Assembly: GCF_006345805.1 (NCBI RefSeq) | Contig: NC_043010.1 | Coordinates: 59,892,001-59,956,000, forward strand | Source: Octopus sinensis | Taxonomy: Eukaryota | Direction: 5' to 3' | DNA: 64,000 bases | Part shown: in pieces, positions 19,200 to 59,405 of the stretch | Numbering within the stretch: the first letter of the stretch is position 1 | Layout of the letters: each line of letters opens with the position of its first letter | Translations under genes and position numbers: made by a program | Notes under the pieces: model-generated | What the model was told of the DNA's origin: nothing | Database searches by the model: none | Seen by the model: the letters and a program-made list of their open reading frames with translations, nothing else

Positions 19200-20720
19200 C
19201 TATAGTGCTGACAGACAACACTATAGTGCTGACAGACAGCCCTATAGTGCTTACAGACAACACTATAGTGCTGACAGACAACACTATAGTGCTGACAGAC
19301 AACCCTATAGTGCTGACAGATAACCCTATAGTGCTGACAGACAACCCTATAGTGCTGACAGACAACACTATAGTGCTGACAGACAACACTATAGTGCTGA
19401 CAGACAACACTATAGTGCTGACAGACAACACTATAGTGCTGACAGACAGCCCTATAGTGCTGACAGACAACACTATAGTGCTGACAGACAACCCTATAGT
19501 GCTGACAGACAACACTATAGTGCTGACAGACAACACTATAGTGCTGACAGACAACACTATAGTGCTGACAGACAGCCCTATAGTGCTGACAGACAACACT
19601 ATAGTGCTGACAGACAACCCTATAGTGCTGACAGACAACACTATAGTGCTGACAGACAACACTATAGTGCTGACAGACAACACTATAGTGCTGACAGACA
19701 GCCCTATAGTGCTGACAGACAACACTATAGTGCTGACAGACAGCCCTATAGTGCTAACAGACAACACTATAGTGCTGACAGACAGCCCTATAGTGCTGAC
19801 AGACAGCCCTATAGTGCTGACAGACAGCCCTATAGTGCTGACAGACAACACTATAGTGCTGACAGACAACACTATAGTGCTGACAGACAACCCTATATTG
19901 CTGACAGACAGCCCTATATTGCTGACAGACAGCCCTATAGTGCTGACAGACAGCCCTATAGTGCTGACAGACAACACTATAGTGCTGACAGACAACACTA
20001 TAGTGCTGACAGACAACCCTATATTGCTGACAGACAACACTATAGTGCTAACAGACAACACTATAGTGCTAACAGACAACCCTATAGTGCTAACAGACAA
20101 CACTATAGTGCTGACAGACAGCCCTATAGTGCTGACAGACAGCCCTATAGCGCTGACAGACAGCCCTATAGTGCTGACAGACAACACTATAGAGCTGACA
20201 GCCCTATGGTGCTGACAGACAACACTATAGTGCTGACAGCCCTATGGTGCTGACAGACAGCCCTATAGTGCTGACAGACAACACTATAGTGCTGACAGAC
20301 AACACTATAGTGCTGACAGACAACACTATAGTGCTGACAGACAACCCTATATTGCTGACAGACAACACTATAGTGCTAACAGACAACACTATAGTGCTAA
20401 CAGACAACCCTATAGTGCTAACAGACAACACTATAGTGCTGACAGACAGCCCTATAGTGCTGACAGACAGCCCTATAGTGCTGACAGACAACACTATAGT
20501 GCTGACAGACAACACTATAGTGCTGACAGACAACCCTATATTGCTGACAGACAACACTATAGTGCTAACAGACAACACTATAGTGCTAACAGACAACCCT
20601 ATAGTGCTAACAGACAACACTATAGTGCTGACAGACAGCCCTATAGTGCTGACAGACAGCCCTATAGTGCTGACAGACAACACTATGTGCTGACAGACAG
20701 TATTGTAGTACTGACAGACA
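19200..20720. repeat. 21-bp minisatellite (CTATAGTGCTGACAGACAACA and variants), ~70 copies
   Basis: Direct reading. Variants end in AACA, AACC or AGCC. Degenerate continuation at 21060-21330 and 21590-21650. Confidence 0.98.
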
Positions 20721-40234: not shown

Positions 40235-41710
40235 CACTCATCCTCTGCCTCAGTCATGTGGTGTCAGGTATACTCAGCACTCATTCTCTGTTTCGGTCAT
40301 GTGGTGTCAGGTATACTCAGCACTCATTCTCTGCTTTAGTCATATGGTGTCAGGTATACTCAGCACTCATCCTCTGTTTCAGTCATGTGGTGTCAGGTAT
40401 ACTCAGCACTCATTCCCTGTTTCGGTCATGTGGTGTCAGGTATACTCAGCACTCATTCTCTGTTTCGGTCATGTGGTGTCAGGTATACTCAGCACTCATT
40501 CTCTGCCTTAGTCATATGGTGTCAGGTATACTCAGCACTCATTCCGTTTCAGTCATGTGGTGTCAGATATACTCAGCACTCATTCTCTGCTTTAGTCATA
40601 TGGTGTCAGGTATACTCAGCACTCATCCTCTGTTTCAGTCATGTGGTGTCAGATATACTCAGCACTCATTCCGTTTCAGTCATGTGGTATCAGGTATACT
40701 CAGCACTCATTCTCTGCCTCAGTCATGTGGTGTCAGGTATACTCAGCACTCATCCTCTGCCTCAGTCATGTGGTGTCAGGTATACTCAGCACTCATTCTC
40801 TGCCTCAGTCATGTGGTGTCAGGTATACTCAGCACTCATCCTCTGCCTCAGTCATGTGGTGTCAGGTATACTCAGCACTCATCCTCTGTTTCAGTCATGT
40901 GGTGTCAGGTATACTCAGCACTCATCCTCTGTTTCAGTCATGTGGTGTCAGGTATACTCAGCACTCATCCTCTGTTTCAGTCATGTGGTGTCAGGTATAC
41001 TCAGCACTCATTCCCTGTTTCAGTCATGTGGCATCAGGTATACTTAGCACTCATCCTCTGTTTCAGTCATGTGGTGTAAGGTATACTCAGCACTCATCTG
41101 CTGTTTCAGTCATGTGGTGTCAGGTATACTCAGCACTCATCCTTTGCTTCAGTCATGTGGTGTCAGGTATACTCAGCACTCATCCTTTGCTTCAGTCATG
41201 TGGTGTCAGGTATACTCAGCACTCATCCTTTGCTTCGGTCATGTGGTGTCAGGTATACTCAGCACTCATCTTCTGCCTAGAGTCATGTGGTGTCAGGTAT
41301 ACTCAGCACTCATTCTCTGCCTCAGTCATGTGGTGTCAGGTATACTCAGCACTCATCCTCTGTTTCGGTCATGTGGTGTCAGGTATACTCAGCACTCATC
41401 CTGTTTCAGCCATGTGGTGTCAGGTATACTCAGCACTCATCCTCTGCTTCAGTCATGTGGTGTCAGGTATACTAAGCACTCATCCTCTGCTTCAGTCATG
41501 TGGTGTCAGGTATACTCAGCACTCATCCTCTGCTTCAGTCATGTGGTGTCAGGTATACTCAGCACTCATCCTCTGCTTCAGTCATGTGGTGTCAGGTATA
41601 CTCAGCACTCATCCTCTGCTTCAGTCATGTGGTGTCAGGTATACTCAGCACTCATCCTCTGTTTCAGTCATGTGGTGTCAGGTATACTCAGCACTCACCC
41701 TCTGCTTCAG
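40235..41710. repeat. 43-bp minisatellite (CAGTCATGTGGTGTCAGGTATACTCAGCACTCATCCTCTGTTT), ~34 copies
   Basis: Direct reading. Occasional 39-41 bp units. Confidence 0.98.
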
Positions 41711-42919
41711 TTACACATTGATTGGCATATTCCCCATTCTACACATCCAAAGCAACACTGCTATTCAAACTCACTCAAGTAGATCTTGTCCTTGGATCCT
41801 CTTTTTTTCCCTCTACATTCATCTCTCTCAGCTTTTGCCTGCACCTACACACATACTTTGCACATTTTGAATGTTGCTCTCAATTTTTCTTTTTTTTTTG
41901 TTGGCCCTGAGAGGTATATTTTGCTTTACACTTTCAGTTTGCAGGAGGATATTTGTAGTGAGACATGTATGTCAGCACTATTTTGTTGTGGTGACATAGC
42001 ACAGTCATGCTGGGCCAATTTCATCCAATTACTGCTGGCTGCAGAAGGATACATGTGGCAACTTCCACTCAGTGGTGAAGTGTGCCAGTTTTGAAAGGCA
42101 AAAAGTCAGTTGCCAATAGAACGTTGAGATGTAAACATCAGTTGCTGTTGGACCACCTAAATGCCAACACTTCATTGCTGTTACTACATGCTGACAAGAT
42201 GTAGTTGCTGGTTTATTCGTGAGATTCTAACTCACCTTGGATGCCACTCATTGGATTTGCTGTATATGCTTACAGCTTGAAATCTTCAGGTTCCAAACTT
42301 AACTAACTTGTATGCTATGGGAAATTAACTCAGGTCTCACACAATACCTGGTGATGTGTTTTTTCTGCATCCACATGTGTGATTTACCATCAACAAATAA
42401 ATTGTTATATTTATTAATGAAAAGATGTTGTCTTCTGATATTTCTTACATCCACATAAACACATATCTGGAACCTTCTTAGATACACAGCATCCAAACTA
42501 ATGTGGTATCATCTTTCTATTTTGTTAAAGTGATAACTTAACTTTTCTGTTATTCTGACCTGACACAAAATTATAAATAACAAAGTGTGTATGGTTGGGA
42601 AAGATGAAAAGTATACAATGAAATAACAGAGAAGAATGAAGTGTGTTGTGAGGAAGAAGAGAGAAAGAAGAAAGGGAATGAGACATGAAAAACCTGCCGA
42701 CTGCCTTGCAATGAATTACAATTAGTTTCCTGACTGAAATCATGAAATCTTTAATGGTAAAAGAATCATAGAAACCACATTTGACAAAACTATGTTAAAA
42801 GTGGAATTTTAATGATTTTTCTGGCAATGTAGTCTTTAATAATTGCTTTCTTTTAGTAAAAGTTACATACTCATAACTAATTAATAAGCAGCTTTCTTTA
42901 TTATAGTATATATATGTAT

Positions 42920-43320
42920 AGGCACCCTTGCCAACCCCCTTTGCTTGTGAAGACATGTTGGGGCAAGCGAAATCGAAATCGAATTGAACCAGCCAGGATC
43001 CCTGGTCTGGTGGTACGTAAAAAGCACTATCCGACTCGTGGCCGATGCCAGCACCGCCTCGACTGGCTTCCGTGCCGGTGGCACATAAAATACACCAATC
43101 TGACCGTGGCCGTTGCCAGCCCCGCCTGGCACCTGTGCAGGTGGCACGTAAAAGCACCCACTACACTCACGGAGTGGTTGGCGTTAGGAAGGGCATCCAG
43201 CTGTAGAAACATTGCCAAATTAGACTGGAGCCTGGTGCAGCCTTCTGGCTTCCCAGAACCCCGGTCGAACCGTCCAACCCATGCTAGCATGGAGAACGGA
43301 CGTTAAATGATGATGATGAT
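42920..43320 (+). mobile_element. Interspersed repeat ending in (GAT)n (LINE 3' end or LINE-tailed SINE); others ~5335-5590, 20770-21060, 34515-34678, 38107-38475, 45040-45500
   Basis: Shared GTGGTTGGCGTTAGGAAGGGCATCCAGCTGTAGAAAC...CCAACCCATGCTAGCATGG...TAAATGATGATGAT. Confidence 0.8.
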
Positions 43321-44390: not shown

Positions 44391-45514
44391 AAGAGAGAGT
44401 GTGTGTGTGTCAAGGAAAGAAAAGTGACAGTGTGCTGTGAGGAAAGACAAAAAGTACTAAACAAAATGACAGAGCAAGGATTATGAACAAAGTTTGTGTG
44501 TAAGAGAAGGGACAAAATCTGATGCAAAGAAGATGTTGAAAAGAAAAAAGAAAATCCACATCAAAATATTACCTAACAATAAATACAAAGTTGATTTACA
44601 ACAGAAAATAATCTGAGGCCATTATTCAAATGACCACGACTAATACATTTGTCTATAATGAAATAAAACTTCTAAGTAGTTTTGATATGATAAAATGGAG
44701 GTAGTGTGAAAATTCTCTTATTTTTTAATGAAAACAACTGAGAGAGGGGGAGGAAAGGAGAGAGAGAGAGGAGATGTGTTGCAATGAATGAAAATTCAAG
44801 CATATACTTGAATATTCATTGATAAAAGAAGTTTGGAAACCTCATTTTGATAACCATATATTAAAATTAGAATTTATAAGAAATTTCTAGACATTGAAGC
44901 ATTTAATAACTAATTTCTTTCAGTAAAAGTTACATAATTCTAGGAAGGGTATCTGGCTGTAGAATATCTGTCTCAACAAATTCTGTCTGACTATACAAGC
45001 AGCATGGAAAAGTGGACAGTAAATGATGATGATGATAATGATGTGCAAACCGAATTCGATGACTGGCACTCGTGCCAGTGGAGCACTAACAGCTCCATCC
45101 GAGTGGGATCACTGCCAGAGCAGCTGTCTGGCTTTAGTGCCAGTGGCACATAAAAAGAACCATTTGAGTGTGATCGTTACCAGCGTCACCTTACTGGCAC
45201 TTGAACAAAACATTCGAGCAAGGTCGTTGCCAGTGCTGCTGGACTGACTCCTGTGCAGGTGGCATGTAAAAAACACCATTACAAGTGTGGCCGTTGCCAG
45301 TACTGCCAGACTGGTGCTCGTGCGAGTGGCACATAAAAGCACCCACTACACTCTTGGAGTGGTTGGCGTTAGGAAGGGCATCAAGCTGGAGAAACTCTGC
45401 CAGATCAGATTGGAGTCTGGTGCAGCTATCTGGTACGCCAATCCTCAATCAAATCGTCCAACCCATGGAAAGCAGACGTTAAATGATGATGAGGATGATG
45501 ATATATGTGTGTTA

Positions 45515-45550
<36 letters not shown>

Positions 45551-45699
45551 CATACATACACACACACATATACATACACACACACACGCATATATATATA
45601 TATACATACATACACACACATATATATATATATACATACATACATACATTGCCAATTTGTTATATATCTGAAAAAGCTGCACACCCTAAAGCATAAAGC

Positions 45700-46022
45700 T
45701 GCACTGTATTTGTACAGTGATTCTACTGCCTGGAGTGAAGACAGGAGAGGTATGCAGTGATATATGTGTGGACGGTGCTGGAGGGGCTGACACCAAACTT
45801 TGGAATCGAGAGTTATACCAGACCTTGATATGGACATCACTGCACTGTTCCAAAATTCCAGGTGTTCCATCTAAGGTGAAGACCATGTACTGCAATAGCT
45901 GAAGGGCCCACAGCTGTTCAATGCCTTGCCAAAACATCTGAGAGATCTCTATGGAGTGGGGGTAGTTATTTTCAAGAAACAACTTGACCTCTCGCCATCC
46001 AAGATCCCACAGGTATATTCTT
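45700..46022 (+). mobile_element. LINE RT C-terminal relic (CR1/L2 group)
   Basis: RRERY..YVW..LEGL.PNFGI...KGPQLFNALPKHLRDLYGVGVVIFKKQLDL. Confidence 0.65.
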
Positions 46023-46869
46023 CCAGCAACCACCCTCTTGACCCAGGGCAGCACTATCGCCTGCAGGCACTTGATGTAGGTGTCTATGTTGAGTGTGAAA
46101 CCATGTGGGAAGATGAATGGAGGCATAATATCGCCGTCACTCCAAACATCATGATGTTGACTGGATGTTTGATTATTATCACACTTGGTACATGTTTTGG
46201 GGACATTGCCAGCCAATGGTTGTTCTGTGTATCCATCACCTGATACTGGCAGAAATTTTTCTCGTCTGTGAAAAACCAAAGCATGTTCAATTGGAGGAGA
46301 TTCTTGAGTTTGTTCAAAAGATTCATAACGTGGTCTTTCCTCTTGTCCTTGATGGCTTGGGGAAAAAATTGACCTTTTCTTATTTTGTATGAGGAATACT
46401 GAATGTCATCATGCAATACCTTCCTGATAGGAAACTCAGGCACTGCCATGTCCATGGTGATGGACCTGATTGGTTTGGAGGGATCGTTACCAATCATGGT
46501 CCAGATCTCACCAACAAATTCAGGAGTTCTTTTCTTACCAGGATGATCAGAGTGAGTTTTCCAAGCTACCATACCTTCATACTCACCATCAAATAGACTC
46601 ATCCAACTCTTTCTGAATCCTCTGTACTGTCCTCAGATTGATACCCAAACACTGAAATGTTTGTATTGGAGCTTCCAGTGTGAATATCAAGCAGTACAGC
46701 ATGTCGTTTCCAAATTTGTGGCAGAGTGAACTGCATCATGGTGCTGTTTTTCTCAGAGATGGTGCCCAACTGACTCTACAATACTGTGCAGTCGACTAAA
46801 CCAAAAAGCAAGCAATGTGCATGTGCAAAATTAGAAATATAAAATGGTGATAATTTACCCATTGCACCT

Positions 46870-48044: not shown

Positions 48045-48302
48045 ACACACATATATATATATATATGTTGTATTTGTTACATTTGAAATTTTATTTTGAT
48101 AACCATATATTAAAATTGGAATTTATAAGAAATTTCAAGATATTGAAAATTTTAATAACTACTTTTTTTTCCGTAAAAGTTACATAATTCTAGGAAGGGT
48201 ATCTGGCTATAAAATATCTGTCTCAACAAATTCTCTCTGACTATACAAGCATGGAAAAGTGGTCATTAAATGATGATGATGATGATGATGGTGATGTGCA
48301 CA

Positions 48303-49330: not shown

Positions 49331-49561
49331 GTATATATCATAAATGTGAGTGAGGAATTTCATCAGAGTTTATGCTATACATACATATATATGTACATAT
49401 ATACCTACATACATTCATATGCACACGTATATACATACATGCATGCATACACACATACATTGTCAATGTATCATATATCCAAAAAAGAAGCACACTCTAA
49501 AGCATACAGCAGTAATGAATCTCTGCAATATATTTATAATGTGTATGTGTATGTATGTGTG

Positions 49562-49624
<63 letters not shown>

Positions 49625-49626
<2 letters not shown>

Positions 49627-50120
49627 ATAAAACGGTAAGATAACAAAAGAAAGAAAGAGACCTCAATATTATGTAAATAGAGGAAGGTGCGGTCTATGCG
49701 ACATGGAGAGATGGCTTATCTGGAAAAGCAGCTTAGACCCTACATGTCTAAATACAAGGACAGAACTTTTCGGATCATGCCCACATGTGACTAAATTTCT
49801 GTTACGTTTTTGGTCCCCTAAAGAAAACAGATAGAACATGCTTTCTATGTTATGTCCCAAGAAGATTTTATATATTTTTATATATTTTTATATATTTTTT
49901 ATGTATTTTTATATAATTTTTATGACAAAAAATGCGAGCGATGTATAAGTACGCAGGCAAGCAGAATTATAACACAGTAATTTCCCTTTATTTAACGGTA
50001 TTTTTTCATAGCGTTTTCAAATAGCCAGATAACCGAAGAGATGGTGTTGTGGATTTCCACTTCGGCATCTGAAACTCAGAGTTTTATCTTGACTACCGAG
50101 TAAAGTAACATATTATTGTA
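49625..50120 (+). mobile_element. 3' end / pseudo-LTR relic of a second Penelope-like family, flanked by (TA)n
   Basis: Unique ~500-bp island between (TA)n runs. Contains a hammerhead-like motif at 50027-50089. Confidence 0.5.
50027..50089 (+). ncRNA. Variant/decayed type I hammerhead motif
   Basis: Stem I AGATAA/TTATCT, core CCGAAGA (U4 to C), stem II GATG...CATC with inner GTGGA/TCCAC hairpin and an extra T, GAAA, near-palindrome ACTCAGAGT, GUU triplet. Confidence 0.55.
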
Positions 50121-50226
50121 TATATATATATATATATATATATGAACTTTAGGTTTCTCATCACTGCTTCGTTTCTTAGAGCTCTGCTGATACCACTACT
50201 ACTACTACTGCTACTACTAAATAAAC

Positions 50227-50257
<31 letters not shown>

Positions 50258-50261
<4 letters not shown>

Positions 50262-51605
50262 AGCGAGAAAGAAGCAACAAGAATGGATAGGTTTTTAGTA
50301 CGATCGTTTCATACAAGGACAGGTTTTATTAAAAGTTGCAAAGATTACAGCATATAAACGAGTCCCGTACTCATCAGCTAAAATACATGTAAGTTCTCTA
50401 GACATCCTAGTGTTTGAGGCTATACTCATGAAGTAATGTAGATAATTAAACAGATTTCTAAAGTTTCATTAAAGTTCTTTAAAGATGATGCATAGTCTTA
50501 TCACAGAATTTTAAAAAAGTTTTGGTAGCATCACAGAGAAGGTGACCTAATCCATATGAATTTCCATAGATATGATGAGGGATTATATACTCACAGAAGA
50601 CAAATTTATCCATTGTTATTAGCATTACAGAGAGGGTGAATTAATCCTTTGTATATATGCACAGATTCCAATGGTGTAGATGTAAATTTCCAGAGAAATG
50701 GAGATGAATTTCATATTCACAGGCGATAAATTTTACAATGGTTGAACACAATGAGGTAGGTACCAATCCTTGTTATATGATTAGGTGTTTGCCATATTAA
50801 TCACATTACTGCTATTCACAAGAGGCTGCAGCTATTTAACTCTTAAAGGTTGAAGGGCTTACTAGATCGGCCAAGAATAGAGAAGGGAATAGAAGAAAAG
50901 AGAGAAAATAATGGAGGAGGGAGCAAAAAAGGGGGGGAAAGGGGGACTAAAAGAGAAGAGAAAAGGGAACAGAGAATAAGAAGAAGAAAAAGAAGAAAGA
51001 GAAAAGAGAAAGGAATAGGGAAAGAAGGGAAAAAAAGAAAAAGAAAAAAGAAAAAAGAGGGTTCTAGTTATACAGAAGAGCTAGTAGACTGTAAGTCTGG
51101 TTTTAATCAACAGGCATCTGGGGACTGGAGGGGAATATTATTATTCTTTGACCAGTAAACCGTTAATTTATTGCTGTTGAAATCAGCTATGAGTTTAAAG
51201 AGAATCTAAAGAGATAACACAGTCAGGGGTTAAGGGGTCAGATGCTAAAATCACCAGAAAATACATTAGGAAAATCTAAGTATAATCTTATCAAAAAGTC
51301 ATTAAAAATTTACTTATTTAATTTATTCATTTTATTGTCTTAAGGAGTTGTCGTTATTATTCATACATTGACCGACTACAGGTCAAATCTTATAAGATCA
51401 TTTACAAGGTGTTAGGGGATTGTCTATCCTAATGAAGATAATCATATTATCACCGAGGGAATAGCCTTATTTATTTAATTATGAAATAGAATTATGGGGC
51501 TACAGTAACTAATTATAATTTATTAGAGTTATGCTACTTAAATTAGATTAAGTTAGGAATTAAAATTAAATATTACAATTAAGATTTAAAATTAAGAATT
51601 TAAAA
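50258..51605 (-). repeat. Left arm of 1348-bp inverted repeat (partner 55064-56411)
   Basis: Reverse-complement identity checked at many anchors. Only two 1-nt indels and one substitution were seen by eye. The junction with the forward element shares TTTAAAA at 51599-51605. Confidence 0.95.
50293..50383 (-). ncRNA. Type I hammerhead ribozyme motif, inverted copy
   Basis: Exact reverse complement of 56286-56376 by eye. Confidence 0.78.
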
Positions 51606-51970
51606 TTCTGTGATAAGACTATGCATCATCTTTAAAGAACTTTAATGAACTTTAGAAATCTGTTTAATTATCTACATTACTTCATGAGTATAGCCTCAAA
51701 CACTAGGATGTCTAGAGAACTTACATGTATTTTAGCTGATGAGTACGGGACTCGTTTATATGCTGTAATCTTTGCAACTTTTAATAAAACCTGTCCTTGT
51801 ATGAAACGATTGTACTAAAAACCTATCCATTCTTGTTGCTTCTTTCTCGCTTATAATCACCCCACATTACTGTATTGTTAAATCAGTATAGTTTTTTTTT
51901 TGGTGCATCTAAGTTAGGTACCATATTCAAGTAAATTTTTTAAATTAACTTGAATCTTTATTGCTCTTTG
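51599..51970 (+). repeat. 5' pseudo-LTR (direct repeat of 56155-56531)
   Basis: Identical by eye except for a C/T at 51811 and a poly-T of 10 vs 15 nt. Confidence 0.93.
51730..51820 (+). ncRNA. Type I hammerhead ribozyme motif, copy in the 5' pseudo-LTR
   Basis: Same as 56286-56376, but stem III reads ACGATTGT (C to T at 51811, still G-U compatible). Confidence 0.75.
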
Positions 51971-52024
51971 AATATATTCCCATACAGTCTGTATGTTTTT
52001 CTGGTACTTAATTTCTCAACAAGA

Positions 52025-52504
52025 ATGGAAAAAGTAAACATTAAGTTCTCCCCTAAAGACATCCCCTTACATAGTATAGATGAATATAATTGGCTTCTCA
52101 TTCATAGGATTAACGATTTCATTAGAAGAATCAGGTGGAAAACGTACCATTTTGATGTCAAACAGAAGAAGAAACCTCAGGAAATGAATACCGAAAAGAA
52201 TTTTAGAAGAATTTTTAAAAGTAGAAAAAGCCCACCTCAGAACCCATTCCTGGAGAACTTTGAGAAAGACTTGCTGAATCTTATAGATGATATTAGCTTC
52301 AATGAACACCCGTTAAGATATAACCCTCACCTTAGACACCTTAGGAACTTTATTCAGTCAACCCGGTGCAAACGTGGAATCCTAGTACCAGCAGATAAAA
52401 CGGGTAATATGTATAGAGTTGATTACGATATTTATAGCAAATTAATTAGGAAAGAACTAAACTCCAAATATAAAATTACAACTAAGAACAATTTGAAAAA
52501 GTAA
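52025..52504 (+). pseudogene. Penelope-like ORF, N-terminal part (frameshifted at ~52490-52505)
   Basis: MEKVNIKFSPKDIP...LIHRINDFIRRIRWKTYHF...FEKDLLNLI...LVPADKTGNMYRV resembles the PLE N-terminal region. It continues in the -1 frame as FEKVNMEMKEI. Confidence 0.75.
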
Positions 52505-52506
52505 AC

Positions 52507-53715
52507 ATGGAAATGAAAGAGATCATGGAGAAACTAAATTTAACAGATAGAACGGAGCCACTTAAACCCTGTGAGCCCAGGATCAACCTTAAAGACCACA
52601 AAAAGGACTTCTTGGATAACCCTTCAGTAAGGCTGATCTGTCCAACTAAGTCGGACATTGGCCGACTTAGTAAATCTATCCTGGATACTGTTCTACCCCA
52701 AATAACCCCTCTTCTCCCCTTAAACCTATGGCTAAGTACCGACGAAGTTCTAAAATGGTTTAACTCTCTAACTAATACTAGTAGTCTGTCCTTTATTCAG
52801 TTCGATATTAATAGTTATTACTCTAGCATTTCCCCTATCTTACTCAACAAATCACTAATATTTGCCATGAATCGCTCCCTCATAACTAGAGAAGAAATCA
52901 ATATTGTGCTACTAGCTAGGAAGACATTTATTGAATTTGAAGATAAATTATGGACTAGAGCAGATACACCAAATTTTTTTGATATACCAATGGGTTCCAG
53001 TGATTCGGCTGAGGTAACCAACCTAGTAGGCGCATATCTATTAAAATGCATAAGCAAGGATATCCCAGAAATACAGGGGGGTCTATATAGAGATGATGCT
53101 CTGTTTGTTATCCCTAGTAATAATAAATCTGTTATAGAAAGGATTAGAAAGAAAATTAATAAGTTCTTTAAGGATTTCAACCTCAGTATAACGTATGAAC
53201 CGGGCACTAAAATAGCTAATTTCCTAGATATTACCCTAGACCTTAACTCCAAGCTACATTACCCATTTAGAAAGGAAGGCGAAGTCACGAATTACGTAAA
53301 TAAATTATCAAATCATCCCCCAAATATAATAGAATCTTTAGTAAGAAATATTTCATTAAGAATTTCAAAATTATCATCCAATAAGGATATATTTAACTCC
53401 CATTCTGAGCATTATAATGCGGCGTTAACTAAGGCTGGATACAACCAAAAGATTACATTCGTTGATAGGGAGAACTCACGTATTCCTAATAATGAAGTTA
53501 TCAGTAATCAAGTAAGCAGCAAAAAAGACCAAACCCGAAATAAAAGTAGAATTAAATTAACGGTAAACGCCAATCTAGAGTACAGGCCCAACAATTCAAA
53601 TAGAAGCATTGACCAGAACATAGGTAACTCGGATAAGATTGAAGTAGATAAACCTAAGATGCACACAAATAAAATAAAAATAATGGTAATAAATACAATA
53701 ACTCCGGTGAGATGA
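52507..53715 (+). pseudogene. Penelope-like reverse transcriptase domain
   Basis: INLKDHK...RLICPTKSDIG, motif A FIQFDINSYYSSIS, motif B IPMGSSDSAEV, motif C LYRDDAL, NFLDITLDL, and thumb YVNKLSNHPP. Confidence 0.9.
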
Positions 53716-53749
53716 ATAGTAGTAATTCTACGAACCCTAAATTTTATAA

Positions 53750-53995
53750 AAAGATATATTATGGCTGAATATTCCTTTCAACTGTGCGATACAATCGGAT
53801 ATACAGAACAAATTCAAAGTAATTCTGGAAAAAAATTTCCCTATCTCTCATAGATATCATAGAATTATTTCTAGGAAAACAGTTAGGATTTCTTATTCAA
53901 CCCTCCCAAATATGTCCACTTTAATAGCTAAAATTAATAATAACAACATTAAACTAGCCAGGAAAGATAGAAATAAAATAATAATATCAGAATGA
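53750..53995 (+). pseudogene. Penelope-like post-thumb conserved segment (separate frame, absent from the ORF track)
   Basis: Hand translation KDILWLNIPFNCAIQSDIQNKFKVILEKNFPISHRYHRIISRKTVRISYSTLPNMSTLIAKINN matches the W-x-N-x-PF...F-P...K/R-x-SYS-x-x-PN block of PLE ORFs. Confidence 0.7.
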
Positions 53996-54436
53996 ATACC
54001 AATAGCAATAACAATAATACTACCAACAATAAAAACAGCAATAGGAACTATCAAACATAGGTGAAATTAGTAACCACAGAATGACTAATAACATTAACAT
54101 TAATAGTAATAATAACAATGCCGATATTAATAGAAGTAATATTGTTAATAATAGAAATAATAGAAATAAGGCTAATGGAGAAAATAAGGAGAATGAAAAT
54201 ATCAGTGATATCTATAACAATAATATACAGTTGGATAAAAGACTAACAATAATAATAACATTACGAATAATATAAGAAATCTTGGTAGGACTTTACGCCT
54301 AAATGATGAAACGGAAGGATCAATAAATAATAACAATACTTTAGATATCAGTACCAACTATAGAAATGATAATCAAAATAATAGGAACCTTAAACATCTA
54401 CCCAGGAATAATCCAAGGCCTGAAGTTGTTCCTCCT

Positions 54437-54862
54437 GTGTGTAAGTGTAGAATAAAATCAAAATGCCCGGCACCTGGTCTATGTAGGGAAAATAATGTAA
54501 TCTATAAATGTACCATATCCACGGAGAATAACAAATATTTTTACATTGGCTGTACAATTAATTTTTTAGCCAGAGTTAGAAATCACATCTCGACTTTTAA
54601 ATTACGTCATAAAGCTGGTACCACCACACTTTCAAACAAAATCTGGGAACTCAAAAATAATAACAAAAATTATACCCTTAATTGGGAAATAGTTAGGAGA
54701 GCAATTCCGTATAAAAATAGTAGGGTTGGTTGTCAACTATGCTCCATGGAGACGTACGAAATTCTAAAGCATAGTAAACATAGAAACTTATTGAATAACC
54801 ATATCGAACTAGGTCAAGTTTGTGTCCACGCTAAATTGAAGACTTTAAAATATTTTAAATGA
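54437..54862 (+). pseudogene. Penelope-like GIY-YIG endonuclease with preceding Cys cluster
   Basis: CKCRIKSKCPAPGLC, then NVIYKC...FYIGCT, R-x-x-x-H (RVRNH), LSNKIWELK, CQLC, LLNN and CVH (CCHH-type residues). Confidence 0.88.
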
Positions 54863-55063
54863 TTGGAATATTCATAACTAGATAGATAGATATAACTTGA
54901 TTTCTACTAGTATAGCACTGCTTTAAGTAGATAACTAAGAGTTCTCACATTACAGTTATCTTTATCTTTTTCCTTATATCTACATCAGTTTTTTGAGAAC
55001 AGAGAAATGAATAGTACTTATTCGCTACTTAATTGAGGCTTTATTTAATTTCAAACTCACAAT

Positions 55064-56411
55064 TTTTAAATTCTTAATTTTAAATCTTAATTGTAATATT
55101 TAATTTTAATTCCTAACTTAATCTAATTTAAATAGCATAACTCTAATAAATTATAATTAGTTACTGTAGCCCCATAATTCTATTTCATAATTAAATAAAT
55201 AAGGCTATTCCCTCGGTGATAATATGATTATCTTCATTAGGATAGACAATCCCCTAACACCTTGTAAATGATCTTATAAGATTTGACCTGTAGTCGGTCA
55301 ATGTATGAATAATAACGACAACTCCTTAAGACAATAAAATGAATAAATTAAATAAGTAAATTTTTAATGACTTTTTGATAAGATTATACTTAGATTTTCC
55401 TAATGTATTTTCTGGTGATTTTAGCATCTGACCCCTTAACCCCTGACTGTGTTATCTCTTTAGATTCTCTTTAAACTCATAGCTGATTTCAACAGCAATA
55501 AATTAACGGTTTACTGGTCAAAGAATAATAATATTCCCCTCCAGTCCCCAGATGCCTGTTGATTAAAACCAGACTTACAGTCTACTAGCTCTTCTGTATA
55601 ACTAGAACCCTCTTTTTTCTTTTTTCTTTTTCTTTTTTTCCCTTCTTTCCCTATTCCTTTCTCTTTTCTCTTTCTTCTTTTTCTTCTTCTTATTCTCTGT
55701 TCCCTTTTCTCTTCTCTTTTAGTCCCCCTTTCCCCCTCCTTTTTTGCTCCCTCCTCCATTATTTTCTCTCTTTTCTTCTATTCCCTTCTCTATTCTTGGC
55801 CGATCTAGTAAGCCCTTCAACCTTTAAGAGTTAAATAGCTGCAGCCTCTTGTGAATAGCAGTAATGTGATTAATATGGCAAACACCTAATCATATAACAA
55901 GGATTGGTACCTACCTCATTGTGTTCAACCATTGTAAAATTTATCGCCTGTGAATATGAAATTCATCTCCATTTCTCTGGAAATTTACATCTACACCATT
56001 GGAATCTGTGCATATATACAAAGGATTAATTCACCCTCTCTGTAATGCTAATAACAATGGATAAATTTGTCTTCTGTGAGTATATAATCCCTCATCATAT
56101 CTATGGAAATTCATATGGATTAGGTCACCTTCTCTGTGATGCTACCAAAACTTTTTTAAAATTCTGTGATAAGACTATGCATCATCTTTAAAGAACTTTA
56201 ATGAACTTTAGAAATCTGTTTAATTATCTACATTACTTCATGAGTATAGCCTCAAACACTAGGATGTCTAGAGAACTTACATGTATTTTAGCTGATGAGT
56301 ACGGGACTCGTTTATATGCTGTAATCTTTGCAACTTTTAATAAAACCTGTCCTTGTATGAAACGATCGTACTAAAAACCTATCCATTCTTGTTGCTTCTT
56401 TCTCGCTTATA
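55064..56411 (+). repeat. Right arm of 1348-bp inverted repeat (partner 50258-51605)
   Basis: As for the left arm. Includes a T/C-rich tract at ~55610-55800. Confidence 0.95.
56286..56376 (+). ncRNA. Type I hammerhead ribozyme motif (PLE-associated, palindromic stem III)
   Basis: Stem I TTTTAG/CTAAAA. Core CTGATGA 56292-56298. Stem II GTACGGGAC/GTCCTTGTAT (one bulge, G-U closing pair). GAAA 56359-56362. Palindrome ACGATCGT 56362-56369. Predicted GUA cleavage after 56370. Confidence 0.8.
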
Positions 56412-56531
56412 ATCACCCCACATTACTGTATTGTTAAATCAGTATAGTTTTTTTTTTTTTTTGGTGCATCTAAGTTAGGTACCATATTCAAGTAAATTTT
56501 TTAAATTAACTTGAATCTTTATTGCTCTTTG

Positions 56532-56572
<41 letters not shown>

Positions 56573-56949
56573 ATGGGGGAGAGAAATAGAGATTAACATA
56601 TATAGTACAGAGTGAGTGCTTTAATCCAATTTGTTGAGATTAGCTTTCCAATCCTGTCTGGTTTCATTAGCAAGGTGCTACTAAATCATCGTAAAAACAT
56701 TATTCTCTGTCAATGATTGATGGCTTAACTCTACAGCTTAATATTGTTTCAGATTCTTTTGTTTTGAAAATGCAATATGTGGCTAAAGTGGAGAACAAAT
56801 CTATAACTGTGATATGAGTCTATAACTTGAACATCTTATTTGCCTGCTACTTGGTGTTTTTTTATTGTCACAAAAACAATATTTCTTAGTTTTAAAAAGA
56901 AATTATGTCTAAAATATGTTTCAAAATAATATTTTGAAATAAACATTTT

Positions 56950-56967
56950 GCTTTCCTTTCATTGCAG
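56950..56967 (+). other. Splice acceptor of the protocadherin coding exon
   Basis: Pyrimidine tract ctttcctttcattgCAG ending at 56967, 41 nt before the ATG. Implies an upstream non-coding exon. Confidence 0.75.
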
Positions 56968-57008
56968 AAACGCTGGGTTAATTTCATGGCTGTCTTTTGC
57001 CTTTCACA

Positions 57009-59405
57009 ATGACAAGCGAAAATATGATGTTGATTGTAATATTTCTGCTCTCAGTTCAGGAGTGTCAATCAATTGACCTTACTTACACTGTCAGAGAAGA
57101 AGAAAGTCCCGGCACTTATATTGGAGACGTTGCTGCTGATTCCCATTTCTTCGATACTGTCCCATCCAAGGATGCACATTTGATAACATTCAGTGAGGTG
57201 CAACGGAGAAAGACGCAGTTGTTTAATGTGAGTGAAAATGGAGGATTATACACAGCACACAAGCTGGATGCTGAATCCCTCTGTACTTTTAACAAAGAAT
57301 GTAGTAGAGTTTCTAAAGTTGCTATTCGGAAAGGGAAATCGTTTTTGAAGATCCTTAAAGTGAAAATAATTATTGAAGACATTAACGACCATCAGCCAAA
57401 CTTCCCTAACTCTCATGTTAGTATCCAGTTTTCAGAACGAGATAGCAAAGGGTCACAGCTGACTATCCCCAATGCTATTGATAAAGACATTTTCTCCCAA
57501 AATCACATGATCAACTATCATTTAAAAAAAATTGATGGTGAACCATTTTCATTGTCTGTTACTAAAAGAGTTGATGGTATATCCTCCTTAAAGATTATTT
57601 TAGAAACAAAATTAGATCGAGAAGTAAAAGATACATATAATATTGAAGTTGTAGCAAAGGATGGTGGTTCCCCACCAAAGCAGAGCAGCTTAAATGTAGA
57701 AATTACAGTTAAAGATGAAAATGATAACCAGCCAGTCTTCTCACAGAATGTTTATAATATATCCATAGAAAGTACACATGAATTAGACAGACCGGTGTTG
57801 AAGTTATCTGCTAATGACCTAGACATTGGCAATAACGGTATTGTTTCTTATGATTTTAGTCCTATGAACTCAAATAATATGAAAACTAAATTTCGGTTGA
57901 ATGAACGGACTGGGGAAATTTTTTTGACTAAACAGTCTCATGTTGAGGAAAAGAATAATTTTGAGTTGTACATCGAAGCCAGAGATGGAGGCAGCCCTCC
58001 TCTCAGTTCCATAGCCACCATTATGATAAAAGTTATCAATCATCACAATAACCCTCCAAATATTGATATAGACTTTGTCTCAGCTATCAATGACAACACA
58101 GCAACCATTTTCGAAGACATCAAAGTTGGTAGTTTCATTGCTTATGTGATGGTCACTGACAATGATGTTGGACACAATGGACAGGTGAACTGTCATATCA
58201 AAGATGACACATTCAAACTACAGTCAATGGGATCGAAGGAATATAAAATAGTTCTAAAGAAAGCAGTAGACAGAGAGACACAGGAACATTATCACTTTAC
58301 TGTGTCGTGTGAAGATAAAGGATTACCTGCTCTGAAAACTGATAAAGATCTGTCAATCCAAGTGTTGGATGTGAATGATGTAGAACCACACTTTACGAAA
58401 GACACATTCAAGTTCCTTACCTATGAGAATGACAAAGCTAATTTCCCTATTGGCTTTATCAATGCTACAGACCCAGATATTGGTAAGGGAGGTGAATTGT
58501 CTTATTCTCTGAGAAATAAACAGCAATATCGTCTGCCATTCCAGATTATCAACTCTGGCTTTATTTCAACAAACCAGTCTTTAGACAGAGAACACAGAGA
58601 TTTCTATGAGTTTGAGGTTTTTGTGAAAGACAATGGAAGCCCATCTCTGAATAACACAGTGAATGTTGAAGTGGAAGTATTGGATAGAAATGATAATGCT
58701 CCCTATTTTACATTTCCTAGTGTTGACCCTTTCACTCTTGATGTCCACTATCATCCGCAAAGTAAGAACGACATCACAGTTCTGAAAGCATCTGATATAG
58801 ACAGTCACATGAATGCTTTTCTCAGGTATGAAATCGTTTCAGGTAACGAGAGACAGTTATTTAAACTGGACTCGTTCACTGGTGTGTTATCTTACTCTCG
58901 CACAGTTTACCAAAATGATGCCGGATCATATGAGCTTGAGTTTGTTGTGAAAGACAGTGGTACTCCAGTTCTCTCAGCAACAACTAGCATCTCTTTGACA
59001 CTGACTGTTAGCAACAAGACGTCACCAATGTTCACAGCTGTGCACCTACCAAGTGATAACACAATAGATGCGACATTGTTGATTATCATTGTAGTAGCAG
59101 CTGTGATAGTATCTATAGCTATTGTGGTTTCTATAACCCTGTGTATTATTCGAGGTAATGTGAGACACGGCTCATCTAGAACAGAAAATAAACAGGCATA
59201 CCAATGTCAGAATGAGATGAGACAGTTGATCTATCAAGGTAACAACAGTGTCTCTGTGATGTCAGGTAATCAAGGAGAGATATCAGACAGATACTGTCAT
59301 TCAAGAAGTCAGTACTATTCTGAAGACTGGAATACTCCAACTGTTCCAAGACTGCCAAAATCATTGAAGGTAAGTTTCCTTTGTTCCAAGTATTTTAATT
59401 CATAA
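57009..59405 (+). CDS. Pcdh: Protocadherin, large coding exon: signal peptide, 6 cadherin repeats, TM helix, proximal cytoplasmic tail (spliced form probably ends at 59369)
   Basis: The ORF-track start at 56997 is TTG; the first in-frame ATG is 57009 (MTSENMMLIVIFLLSVQECQS, signal-like). Cadherin linkers DINDHQP, DENDNQP, NHHNNPP, DVNDVEP, DRNDNAP. LDRE/VDRE and A-x-D-x-G-x-P motifs. EC1 LDAESLCTFNKEC Cys pair typical of protocadherins. TM LLIIIVVAAVIVSIAIVVSITLCII. The single large EC+TM exon matches protocadherin gene architecture. The symbol is family-level only. Confidence 0.96.
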   Translation: MTSENMMLIVIFLLSVQECQSIDLTYTVREEESPGTYIGDVAADSHFFDTVPSKDAHLITFSEVQRRKTQLFNVSENGGLYTAHKLDAESLCTFNKECSRVSKVAIRKGKSFLKILKVKIIIEDINDHQPNFPNSHVSIQFSERDSKGSQLTIPNAIDKDIFSQNHMINYHLKKIDGEPFSLSVTKRVDGISSLKIILETKLDREVKDTYNIEVVAKDGGSPPKQSSLNVEITVKDENDNQPVFSQNVYNISIESTHELDRPVLKLSANDLDIGNNGIVSYDFSPMNSNNMKTKFRLNERTGEIFLTKQSHVEEKNNFELYIEARDGGSPPLSSIATIMIKVINHHNNPPNIDIDFVSAINDNTATIFEDIKVGSFIAYVMVTDNDVGHNGQVNCHIKDDTFKLQSMGSKEYKIVLKKAVDRETQEHYHFTVSCEDKGLPALKTDKDLSIQVLDVNDVEPHFTKDTFKFLTYENDKANFPIGFINATDPDIGKGGELSYSLRNKQQYRLPFQIINSGFISTNQSLDREHRDFYEFEVFVKDNGSPSLNNTVNVEVEVLDRNDNAPYFTFPSVDPFTLDVHYHPQSKNDITVLKASDIDSHMNAFLRYEIVSGNERQLFKLDSFTGVLSYSRTVYQNDAGSYELEFVVKDSGTPVLSATTSISLTLTVSNKTSPMFTAVHLPSDNTIDATLLIIIVVAAVIVSIAIVVSITLCIIRGNVRHGSSRTENKQAYQCQNEMRQLIYQGNNSVSVMSGNQGEISDRYCHSRSQYYSEDWNTPTVPRLPKSLKVSFLCSKYFNS
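59367..59375 (+). other. Splice donor ending the protocadherin coding exon (phase 0)
   Basis: AAG|GTAAGT perfect consensus at 59369/59370. 57009-59369 is 2361 nt = 787 codons. Confidence 0.85.

What the first reader, a model, noticed from the sequence alone, without database searches (positions are those of the whole stretch)
50258..56531. Penelope-like element carrying three hammerhead ribozymes, 436 bp upstream of a protocadherin coding exon
Seen: RT and GIY-YIG pieces, a direct pseudo-LTR, and three 91-nt type I hammerhead motifs (51730-51820 +, 56286-56376 +, 50293-50383 -) with intact CUGAUGA/GAAA core, 6-bp stem I, a long stem II insert, palindromic stem III ACGATCGT and GUA triplet. 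Known: PLE pseudo-LTRs carry minimal hammerheads that cleave efficiently as dimers through palindromic stem III. Inference: the two plus-strand copies are sense to the protocadherin. If this is intron, one pre-mRNA holds both dimer partners, the last cutting ~600 nt before the acceptor. That could be a self-cleaving switch affecting protocadherin splicing or yield.
Basis: partly seen in the sequence, partly recalled or inferred. Interest (0 to 1): 0.82.

Follow-up and report, generated by a model that had tools for sequence, protein, structure and literature searches.

The report
Young Penelope-like retrotransposon beside octopus protocadherin
This is a very recent insertion of a Penelope-like retrotransposon, absent from the Octopus vulgaris reference genome, whose hammerhead ribozymes belong to the element itself; nothing shows that they regulate the protocadherin gene 0.5 kb downstream.

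Summary
Window 50262-56531 is one composite Penelope-like element (PLE). It consists of an inverted 5'-truncated copy, a partial tandem copy that forms the pseudo-LTR, and one full 4.56-kb unit. Three 91-nt type I hammerhead motifs sit at the stated coordinates.

- **Hammerhead is real.** Related elements in O. sinensis, O. bimaculoides, Argonauta hians and an ENA assembly carry it at the same pseudo-LTR position, with compensatory changes in all three helices.
- **Clade.** The protein motifs (RWK, DKT, CxCX5C, CxxC/CxH) and the (TA)n target match the Hydra clade of PLEs.
- **Corrections.** The 5' pseudo-LTR copy reads ACGATTGT, not ACGATCGT. The reading frame is broken in at least four places. 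Rfam models do not detect the motif.

The proposed protocadherin switch is not supported:
- The whole complex is missing, as a clean empty (TA)n site, from the O. vulgaris reference, which encodes an identical first coding exon.
- The insertion is very young (about 0.1% divergence between its internal copies).
- A read-through transcript would lock the sense ribozymes into perfect dsRNA with the inverted copy.
- The literature reports very low cleavage rates for PLE hammerheads.
- The gene's transcription start is unknown.

Verdict: a new member of a known kind, of modest interest.

The parts
50225..50261 (.). Left half of the (TA)n microsatellite that was the insertion target
   Evidence: In the reference locus L006 the (TA)n is continuous (9505-9566). 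The window aligns up to 50261 and resumes at 56532.
50258..51605 (-). Inverted, 5'-truncated copy of the PLE unit, equivalent to 55064-56411
   Evidence: Inverted repeats I1-I3. One mismatch and one small indel (2 gap columns) in 1,348 nt. The Argonauta element L001 has the same arrangement.
50293..50383 (-). Hammerhead motif of the inverted copy. On the plus strand it is the exact antisense of the other two.
51599..51970 (+). Upstream partial tandem copy (5' pseudo-LTR)
   Evidence: Direct repeats D4/D5. One mismatch and a 5-nt poly-T difference against 56155-56531.
51730..51820 (+). Hammerhead motif with stem III ACGAUUGU (C to U at 51811, a CpG to TpG change). Predicted cleavage after 51814.
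51971..56531 (+). Full-length PLE unit, 4.56 kb
   Evidence: Repeat spacing of 4556-4561 nt and the end of homology with the empty site.
52025..52495 (+). N-terminal part of the PLE ORF, with the RWK motif (52133-52141) and the DKT motif (52394-52402)
   Evidence: ORF translation; tblastn with P0004 and P0005; motif description in PMC8557442.
52492..53631 (+). Reverse-transcriptase core in a different frame (frameshift near 52495-52501). YRDD lies at 53086-53097.
   Evidence: RVT_1 E=8e-4. Invariant G-L-Y-R-D-D in 11 homologues. Predicted fold matches TERT, retron and group II intron RTs at E of about 1e-5 to 1e-6.
53750..53953 (+). Conserved post-RT segment of the WFNPPF...SYS type, in a frame shifted again. 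It is followed by stops and an N-rich low-complexity stretch at 53990-54430.
   Evidence: tblastn and three-frame translation.
54437..54862 (+). CxCX5C linker (54440-54466) plus the GIY-YIG endonuclease domain. All residues invariant in the family are present.
   Evidence: GIY-YIG E=2e-3. Alignment invariants C,C,C,Y,Y,G,R,H,CxxC,E,N,CxH. The model's best PDB match is the I-TevI catalytic domain, TM 0.71.
56155..56531 (+). 3' pseudo-LTR. The last 120 nt (56412-56531) form a tail that the inverted copy lacks.
56286..56376 (+). Hammerhead motif with palindromic stem III ACGAUCGU. Predicted cleavage after 56370.
56532..56575 (.). Right half of the target (TA)n microsatellite
56616..57008 (+). Non-coding block upstream of the protocadherin ATG, conserved with the Argonauta orthologue. 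It holds an acceptor-like site (TTTCATTGCAG, AG at 56966-56967) and is not part of the element.
   Evidence: 71% identity over 702 aligned columns (window 56616-57300), running into the CDS; alignment A4.
57009..59372 (+). First coding exon of a clustered protocadherin: signal peptide, six cadherin repeats and a transmembrane segment. The donor AAG|GTAAGT follows 59372.
   Evidence: Pfam Cadherin E=4e-72 with 6 stretches. 100% identical to P0030, 'protocadherin beta-15-like isoform X2 [Octopus vulgaris]'. Donor sequence.

Best explanation
A Hydra-clade Penelope-like retrotransposon inserted very recently into a (TA)n microsatellite about 0.48 kb upstream of the start codon of a clustered protocadherin gene in Octopus vulgaris. 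The insertion has the composite form typical of PLE integration: an inverted 5'-truncated copy, then a partial tandem copy (the pseudo-LTR), then a full unit. The hammerhead therefore appears three times because the 3' end of the unit is present three times.

The hammerhead is the element's own conserved RNA module. Its inferred role is to cut the element's longer-than-unit transcript at 51814/51815 and 56370/56371. This would probably happen as a dimer formed through the self-complementary stem III. It would release a unit-length 4,556-nt RNA, possibly circularised, that serves as the retrotransposition template.

This copy is probably non-autonomous as assembled, because its reading frame is interrupted. 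Nothing indicates a role selected for the protocadherin gene. Any effect on the gene would be an incidental consequence of a transposon landing near its 5' end.
For: **Shown**
- Architecture and near-identity of the repeated parts.
- Exact empty site in the O. vulgaris reference.
- The same composite architecture, (TA)n target and hammerhead position in the Argonauta hians relative, whose RT is 41% identical. The same hammerhead position and (TA)n junction also occur in O. sinensis, O. bimaculoides and ENA relatives.
- Hammerhead covariation. On 10 sequences anchored at the core, 87% of cells pair and 13 of 14 pairs show changes on both sides. The covariation score is 0.72, against 0.25 in shuffles (0 of 500 reach it) and about 0.1 with slid partners.
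- RNAalifold on an automatic alignment recovers the base of helix II, with 5 of 6 pairs compensated.
- Stem III is self-complementary in every intact relative: ACGAUCGU, ACAAUUGU, ACGUACGU, ACAGCUGU, AUAAAUUUAU.
- The 10.1-11.1 pair runs G-C, G-U, A-U across relatives.
- Hydra-clade motifs are present: RWK, DKT, CxCX5C, CxxC and CxH around the E and N residues, and a (TA)n target.
- The predicted folds are RT and GIY-YIG.
- PLEs are among the young TE families of O. vulgaris (PMC13282606).

**Inferred from the literature, not shown here**
- Processing of the element's own RNA, and a circular intermediate (PMC4209133, PMC6765202).
Against: - No cleavage data exist for this sequence.
- The window copy has G10.1-U11.1 instead of the G-C that PMC4209133 calls highly conserved.
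- The ribozyme fold is 5 kcal/mol above the predicted MFE, and the predicted dimer does not use helix III.
- The ORF has at least four frame disruptions. Either the copy was mobilised in trans or the assembly carries indel errors.
- The unit is 4.56 kb, longer than the '<3 kb' reported as typical of Hydra-clade elements.
- No phylogeny with reference Hydra sequences was run.
- Craig et al. note that PLEs lacking hammerheads proliferate well, so the ribozyme's role in transposition is itself unproven.
Confidence: 0.8

Rival explanations
1. First reader's model. The element lies in a 5'UTR intron of the protocadherin. Its two sense hammerheads dimerise within the pre-mRNA and cut it about 600 nt before the acceptor, acting as a switch on splicing or mRNA yield.
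For: - The motifs are in the same orientation as the gene.
- An acceptor-like site 41 nt before the ATG is conserved in the Argonauta orthologue, and a similar one lies 57 nt before the ATG of a paralogue. A 5'UTR intron is therefore plausible.
- Intronic self-cleaving ribozymes that tune mRNA output are known, for example the CPEB3 ribozyme (PMC10919898) and the amniote intronic hammerheads (PMC6155905).
Against: - The insertion is absent from the reference genome and from the Argonauta orthologue, so it is not a conserved device.
- The transcription start is unknown. The conserved 390-bp block ends just downstream of the element and may hold the promoter.
- In a read-through RNA the antisense copy would sequester the sense ribozymes in perfect duplex.
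- PLE hammerheads cleave poorly in vitro, even as dimers (PMC4209133, PMC6765202).
- The two sense copies are 4.5 kb apart.
- The window copies have G-U at 10.1-11.1, and one copy has a loop III change.
Confidence: 0.05
2. The insertion does alter expression of the protocadherin allele, but through ordinary transposon effects and not through ribozyme cleavage. Possible routes:
- it moves upstream regulatory DNA 6.3 kb further away;
- the 3' pseudo-LTR drives read-out transcripts;
- the 1.35-kb perfect inverted repeat yields dsRNA that attracts editing or small-RNA silencing.
For: - The element ends 85 bp from a non-coding block conserved with Argonauta and 478 bp from the ATG.
- The inverted repeat is 1,348 nt long with 1 mismatch.
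- PLE pseudo-LTRs typically contain promoters (PMC6765202).
Against: - No expression data.
- No promoter was mapped in this family.
- Many TE insertions near genes are neutral.
- The carrier allele's coding exon is intact and identical to the reference.
Confidence: 0.2
3. In this copy the hammerheads are inactive relics. The motif is inherited from an active master element, but this copy can no longer cleave, because of the G-U closing stem II, the weak stem III and the competing folds.
For: - G10.1-U11.1 in the window, against G-C in the O. sinensis and O. bimaculoides relatives.
- Both point changes are CpG to TpG, the usual decay pattern.
- The MFE fold is not the ribozyme fold.
- The ORF is broken.
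- Some relatives are clearly decayed, for example GGAA in L007 and A15.2 in L005b.
Against: - The full catalytic core is intact in all three copies.
- G-U also closes stem II in the Argonauta element, and the closest O. sinensis relative has A-U. The position therefore still behaves as a pair under selection.
- The insertion is so young that the source element carried this same sequence while it was mobile.
Confidence: 0.25

Closest known systems
Hydra clade of C-terminal-endonuclease Penelope-like elements (Craig et al. 2021, PMC8557442)
   Same: - RT followed by a C-terminal GIY-YIG domain.
- RWK and DKT motifs.
- CxCX5C linker, with CxxC and CxH around the catalytic E and N residues instead of CCHH.
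- Insertion into (TA)n.
- Pseudo-LTR plus an inverted truncated copy, and a hammerhead in the pseudo-LTR.
- The clade has been reported from Mollusca among other phyla.
   Different: - The unit is 4.56 kb, not under 3 kb. It has a long N-rich linker and a long 3' UTR.
- The ORF is interrupted in this copy.
- No tree with reference Hydra proteins was built here.
- I could not see which mollusc families that paper lists, because its supplements are not held.
Minimal type I hammerheads of metazoan PLEs (Cervera & De la Pena 2014, PMC4209133)
   Same: - Type I topology and location in the pseudo-LTR.
- Very short, self-complementary helix III, implying action as a dimer.
- Helix II larger than usual.
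- Many variants per lineage, with compensatory changes.
   Different: - Helix II is about 60 nt with an internal hairpin, not 6-8 bp.
- There is no unpaired nucleotide between A9 and 10.1.
- The window copies close helix II with G-U, not G-C.
- Helix I is 6 bp, not 4-5 bp.
Non-LTR retrozymes (PMC7229834; bioRxiv 10.64898/2026.07.22.740005)
   Same: - Related hammerheads derived from PLE pseudo-LTRs.
- Unit-length RNA released by two cuts.
- A retrozyme-like 503-bp tandem array with compact hammerheads lies next to a related PLE copy in O. sinensis (L005).
   Different: The window element is a coding-type PLE unit of 4.56 kb, not a short non-coding tandem repeat.
Intronic self-cleaving ribozymes of host genes: the CPEB3 HDV-like ribozyme (PMC10919898) and the amniote intronic hammerheads in RECK, CTCL and DTNB (PMC6155905)
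   Different: - Those ribozymes are conserved at orthologous positions across species. This one is a presence/absence variant within O. vulgaris.
- Its intronic location is unproven.
- It comes with an antisense copy.

Membership tests
Penelope-like elements (EN+ type) | Reverse transcriptase domain | tested here: met
   - RVT_1 hit at E=8e-4, below Pfam's cutoff.
- Invariant FDI and GLYRDD motifs across 11 homologues.
- The AlphaFold model (pLDDT above 90 over the core) matches TERT, retron and group II intron RTs at E of 4e-6 to 1e-4.
Penelope-like elements (EN+ type) | GIY-YIG endonuclease C-terminal to the RT | tested here: met
   - Pfam GIY-YIG at E=2e-3, below its cutoff.
- Catalytic Y, Y-G, R, H, E and N residues are invariant.
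- The model's best PDB matches are I-TevI, T4 EndoII and UvrC-N.
Penelope-like elements (EN+ type) | Pseudo-LTRs from partial tandem copies, often with an adjacent inverted 5'-truncated copy | tested here: met
   The same layout occurs in the Argonauta relative. The layout is described in PMC8557442.
Penelope-like elements (EN+ type) | Hammerhead motif in the pseudo-LTR | tested here: met
Penelope-like elements (EN+ type) | RT groups with PLE and TERT reverse transcriptases in a phylogeny | tested here: inconclusive
   - TERTs are among the top structural matches, but retron RTs score equally well.
- A profile search of PDB sequences found nothing.
- No tree was built.
Penelope-like elements (EN+ type) | Single uninterrupted RT-EN reading frame (an autonomous copy) | tested here: not met
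   The frame changes near 52495-52501 and again between 53631 and 53750. Stops and frame changes occupy 53990-54430. Relatives P0006, P0011, P0014 and P0017 have one continuous ORF.
Hydra clade of PLEs | RWK motif, and DKT in place of DKG | tested here: met
   IRRIRWK and PADKTGN lie in the 51950-52504 ORF. Relatives have RWK, RWR or RWM, and DKT or DKS.
Hydra clade of PLEs | CxCX5C linker; no CCHH; CxxC and CxH flanking the conserved E and N | tested here: met
   The window reads CKCRIKSKC ... CQLCSME ... NNHIELGQVCVH. All of these are invariant in alignment A3.
Hydra clade of PLEs | Insertion into (TA)n | tested here: met
   The empty site lies inside (TA)n. Relatives end in (TA)n as well.
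Hydra clade of PLEs | Short element (generally under 3 kb) | tested here: not met
   The unit is 4,556 nt here and 3,217 nt in Argonauta.
Hydra clade of PLEs | Placement inside the clade in a tree with reference Hydra families | not tested
   No reference Hydra sequences were available, and the paper's supplements are not held.
Type I hammerhead ribozyme | Conserved core: C3 U4 G5 A6 N7 G8 A9, G12 A13 A14, A15.1-U16.1, H17 | tested here: met
   All three window copies have it. The core columns are invariant across 10 relatives, apart from one decayed copy.
Type I hammerhead ribozyme | Three helices around the core, supported by covariation, with helix I open | tested here: met
   13 of 14 pairs have changes on both sides, and 0 of 500 shuffles reach the observed score. 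The alignment was anchored by hand on the core and trimmed inside helix II. One search gives an automatic alignment that recovers only helix II.
Type I hammerhead ribozyme | G10.1-C11.1 closing helix II (highly conserved according to PMC4209133) | tested here: not met
   The window and Argonauta have G-U. O. sinensis L005 and O. bimaculoides L008 have G-C. O. sinensis L007 and ENA L004 have A-U.
Type I hammerhead ribozyme | Match to the Rfam hammerhead covariance models | tested here: not met
   No hit at gathering score or at E<=10. The models also miss compact PLE-type hammerheads in L005, so the test lacks power for this subtype.
Type I hammerhead ribozyme | Self-cleavage at H17 | not testable with these tools
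   Needs in vitro transcription or RNA end mapping.
Host-gene intronic regulatory ribozyme (CPEB3 or RECK type) | Conserved at the orthologous position of the host gene | tested here: not met
   Absent from the O. vulgaris reference and from the Argonauta orthologue's upstream region.
Host-gene intronic regulatory ribozyme (CPEB3 or RECK type) | Lies within the host pre-mRNA | not testable with these tools
   Gene records available here begin at the ATG, and no transcript data are on hand.

The most novel reading that the evidence does not exclude
In octopuses that carry this allele, the element might lie inside the protocadherin primary transcript. Its ribozymes, or more likely its 1.35-kb perfect inverted repeat, would then lower or re-route that allele's mRNA. 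This would be a natural presence/absence polymorphism in which a retrotransposon's RNA modules change the output of one member of the neuronal protocadherin repertoire.
Probability: 0.07. Interest if true: 0.6.

Novelty: new member of a known kind. Interest (0 to 1): 0.25.

Why it matters
- **For transposon biology.** It adds a cephalopod lineage of Hydra-type PLEs: O. vulgaris, O. sinensis, O. bimaculoides and Argonauta. Their hammerhead has an unusually long helix II that standard Rfam models miss. The presence/absence difference between two O. vulgaris sequences shows that the family was mobile very recently.
- **For octopus neurogenomics.** It marks a structural variant 0.5 kb from the start codon of a clustered protocadherin. 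The variant could be genotyped and tested for allele-specific expression.
- **Limits.** It does not reveal a new mechanism. The ribozyme-switch idea has known precedents (CPEB3, amniote intronic hammerheads), and the evidence here does not support it.

Tried and rejected
- **Rfam, whole window at gathering score and 8 kb at E<=10.** Only microsatellite-driven miRNA-like noise came up. I do not count this as evidence against the hammerhead, because a control region with compact PLE-type hammerheads is also missed.
- **Thermodynamic folding.** Z-scores of -0.2 to -0.8, and the MFE is not the ribozyme fold. This is uninformative for minimal hammerheads and only weak evidence against efficient cleavage.
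- **Sequence searches for the RT.** A profile search against PDB sequences, NCBIfam and Pfam on four relatives found nothing significant.
- **Vertebrate-style shared constant exons.** I considered whether the element sits in pre-mRNAs of upstream variable exons. This was rejected because cephalopod protocadherins are whole-gene duplicates (PMC9068888).
- **Assembly artefact for the inverted duplicate.** Rejected, because the same layout occurs in the Argonauta relative and is the described PLE pattern.
- **Look-up of the O. sinensis protocadherin P0032.** No record was found.
- **Supplements of PMC8557442.** They are not held, so I could not check whether an octopus Hydra family is already listed.
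- **Gene ranges from the look-up of encoding contigs.** They start at the ATG and give no UTR information.

Full report
**What is in the sequence.** Repeat analysis of 49500-57500 and pairwise alignment show that the finding's interval is one composite insertion with three parts:
- 50258-51605 is the reverse complement of 55064-56411. It is 1,348 nt long and differs by 1 mismatch and one small indel (2 gap columns).
- 51599-51970 is a direct copy of 56155-56531, with 1 mismatch and a 5-nt poly-T difference.
- 51971-56531 is a full 4.56-kb unit.

The 3' part of the unit is therefore present three times, once inverted. That is why one hammerhead motif appears three times. Both flanks are (TA)n.

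**The hammerhead motif.**
- Each hit has stem I UUUUAG/CUAAAA and a CUGAUGA core.
- Stem II is about 60 nt and starts GUAC.../...GUAU, so it closes with G10.1-U11.1.
- GAAA follows, then stem III ACGAUCGU and the GUA triplet.
- The 51730 copy has ACGAUUGU (C to U at 51811). This sequence still self-pairs through G-U.
- In 300 dinucleotide shuffles the relaxed descriptor gives 0.027 hits per window, the palindromic version 0.003, and the observed stem lengths none.
- Rfam finds no hammerhead at gathering score or at E<=10. It also misses compact PLE/retrozyme-type hammerheads in a control locus, so this negative carries little weight.
- Thermodynamics give no support. The z-scores are -0.2 to -0.8. 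The ribozyme fold is -9.0 kcal/mol against an MFE of -14.3 kcal/mol. The predicted dimer does not use helix III.

**Comparative evidence for the hammerhead.** The 402-aa RT ORF finds 29 homologues, in Octopus sinensis, O. bimaculoides, Argonauta hians and an ENA assembly. I fetched DNA around eight of them.
- The Argonauta element, whose RT is 41% identical, has the same composite layout and the same (TA)n flank.
- Seven of the eight loci carry a hammerhead of the same build about 40 nt from the unit's 3' end. It was not found in O. sinensis locus L009, whose only motif is of a different build.
- Stem I differs between lineages but stays paired: UUUUAG/CUAAAA, UCGG/CCGA, GCAG/CUGC, GAU/AUC.
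- The base of stem II co-varies: GUAC/GUAU, GUCA/UGAU, GUAU/GUAC, AGUC/GAUU.
- Stem III stays self-complementary: ACGAUCGU, ACAAUUGU, ACGUACGU, ACAGCUGU, AUAAAUUUAU.
- I aligned ten sequences, anchored on the core and trimmed inside helix II. In that alignment 87% of cells pair and 13 of 14 pairs show changes on both sides. The covariation score is 0.72, against 0.25 in shuffles (0 of 500 reach it) and about 0.1 with slid partners.
- That alignment was hand-anchored and so leans towards the structure. An automatic MAFFT/RNAalifold run recovers only the base of helix II, with 5 of 6 pairs compensated.
- The 10.1-11.1 pair is G-C in O. sinensis L005 and O. bimaculoides, G-U in the window and Argonauta, and A-U in O. 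sinensis L007 and the ENA element. The wobble is thus part of a pair that is maintained, not clearly a lesion.
- Some relatives are visibly decayed: GGAA in L007 and A15.2 in L005b.

**What the element is.** Pfam gives only sub-threshold RVT_1 (19.6 bits) and GIY-YIG (18.6 bits) hits. Profile searches against PDB sequences and NCBIfam find nothing.
- Alignments of the homologues show invariant FDI and GLYRDD motifs, and the GIY-YIG catalytic set Y, Y-G, R, H, E, N.
- AlphaFold models built on those alignments match reverse transcriptases, including TERT (E of about 1e-5 to 1e-6), and the I-TevI GIY-YIG domain (TM 0.71).
- Craig et al. 2021 define the Hydra clade of PLEs by the following: RWK; DKT instead of DKG; a CxCX5C linker; loss of CCHH, with CxxC and CxH around the E and N residues; insertion into (TA)n; and canonical hammerheads.
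- The window element has every one of these. It reads IRRIRWK, PADKTGN, CKCRIKSKC and CQLC...E...N...CVH, and it sits in (TA)n.
- It is longer than the clade's usual size of under 3 kb.
- I did not build a tree with reference Hydra families.
- This copy's ORF is interrupted. The frame shifts near 52495-52501 and between 53631 and 53750, and stops and frame changes lie in an N-rich stretch at 53990-54430. Relatives have a single ORF.

**The insertion is young and polymorphic.** The protocadherin exon (ATG at 57009, donor after 59372) is 100% identical to an O. vulgaris RefSeq-type protein, P0030.
- The reference locus, OX597827.1 or L006, aligns colinearly with the window at 95-99% identity. 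However, window 50262-56531 has no counterpart. Window 50100-50261 maps to L006 9369-9532 and window 56532 onwards maps to L006 9523 onwards, inside one continuous (TA)n.
- Divergence between the internal copies is about 0.1%.
- The region upstream of the Argonauta orthologue also lacks the element.
- A 2026 repeat annotation lists PLEs among the young TE families of O. vulgaris.

**Relation to the protocadherin.** The two plus-strand hammerheads are in the same sense as the gene. The element ends 436 bp before an acceptor-like site (AG at 56966-56967) and 478 bp before the ATG.
- That acceptor-like site is conserved in the Argonauta orthologue. A similar one precedes a paralogue's ATG. A 5'UTR intron is therefore plausible.
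- However, the 390 bp upstream of the ATG is 71% conserved with Argonauta, and the homology stops about 85 bp from the insertion. This pattern fits a promoter plus first exon at least as well as it fits the end of a long intron.
- The gene records within reach start at the ATG, so the transcription start is unknown.
- Cephalopod protocadherins are whole-gene duplicates without shared constant exons. The element therefore cannot sit in transcripts of upstream 'variable exons'.
- If a transcript did read through from upstream, the antisense copy would be made first. In the MFE fold of 50240-51880, all 91 nt of the 51730 ribozyme pair with it. The 208-bp duplex is worth -364 kcal/mol.
- The literature read here reports low in vitro cleavage by PLE hammerheads, even as dimers.

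**Most likely mechanism.**
- Shown: the hammerhead is a conserved module of this PLE family and sits near the unit's 3' end.
- Inferred from published models: it cuts the element's longer-than-unit transcript at 51814/51815 and 56370/56371, probably as a dimer through the self-complementary stem III. This releases a 4,556-nt unit RNA that may circularise and serve as the template for the next insertion.
- Nothing supports a function selected for the host gene.
- An incidental cis effect on this allele remains possible. It could come from promoter displacement, pLTR read-out or dsRNA, and it would need expression data to test.

**Verdict.** The identification as a PLE carrying hammerheads is right and can be sharpened to the Hydra clade. 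The regulatory-switch reading is unsupported, and several lines of sequence evidence count against it. This is a new member of a known kind.

Noticed in passing
L005 1410-2878 (O. sinensis VCDQ01005361.1): Tandem units of about 503 bp each carry a compact minimal hammerhead (CCAUG/CUGAUGA/U/GGCUG...CAGCC/GAAA/CUAAUUAG/UA/CAUGG). Three are on one strand and one on the other. This looks like a retrozyme-like array next to a Hydra-type PLE copy. Rfam does not detect these hammerheads either.
   Followed up: partly
window 56616-57008; L010 9612-10000: The 390 bp upstream of the protocadherin ATG is 71% conserved between O. vulgaris and Argonauta. Conserved blocks include TTTAATCCAATTTGTTGAGATT, TGTCAATGATTGATGG and GAAATGCAATAT, a donor-like CAAGGTG and an acceptor-like TTTCATTGCAG. 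It may be a promoter plus a short 5'UTR intron.
   Followed up: partly
window 19165-20721 and 40235-41711: Two large minisatellites: a 21-bp unit repeated 74 times and a 43-bp unit repeated 34 times. The second is also present in the reference locus L006, arranged differently, so it is likely length-polymorphic.
   Followed up: no
window 43170-43320, 45346-45502, 48233-48296: A short interspersed repeat has more than ten copies, 70-87% identical, in the Argonauta protocadherin locus L010. It looks like an old SINE-like family shared by octopods.
   Followed up: no
window 45686-46602 (-): Two adjacent ORFs of 197 and 172 aa in different frames resemble a decayed transposase. Neither has a significant Pfam hit.
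   Followed up: no
proteins P0002, P0003, P0005, P0008, P0012, P0029: Public gene models name fragments of this PLE ORF 'GATA zinc finger domain-containing protein 14-like', 'serine/threonine-protein kinase DDB_G0283337' and similar. One ankyrin-repeat gene model includes a short PLE-derived stretch. The N-rich low-complexity linker probably drives these misannotations.
   Followed up: no
window 51811 versus 56367; position 11.1 of all three hammerheads: Both point differences in the hammerhead are CpG to TpG transitions. One is between the two pseudo-LTR copies. The other separates this family's U11.1 from the C11.1 of the O. sinensis and O. bimaculoides relatives.
   Followed up: partly
window 56412-56531: A 120-nt tail follows the canonical 3' end of the unit (...GTTGCTTCTTTCTCGCT) in both direct copies but is missing from the inverted copy. 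Several relatives end in (TA)n at the shorter point.
   Followed up: partly
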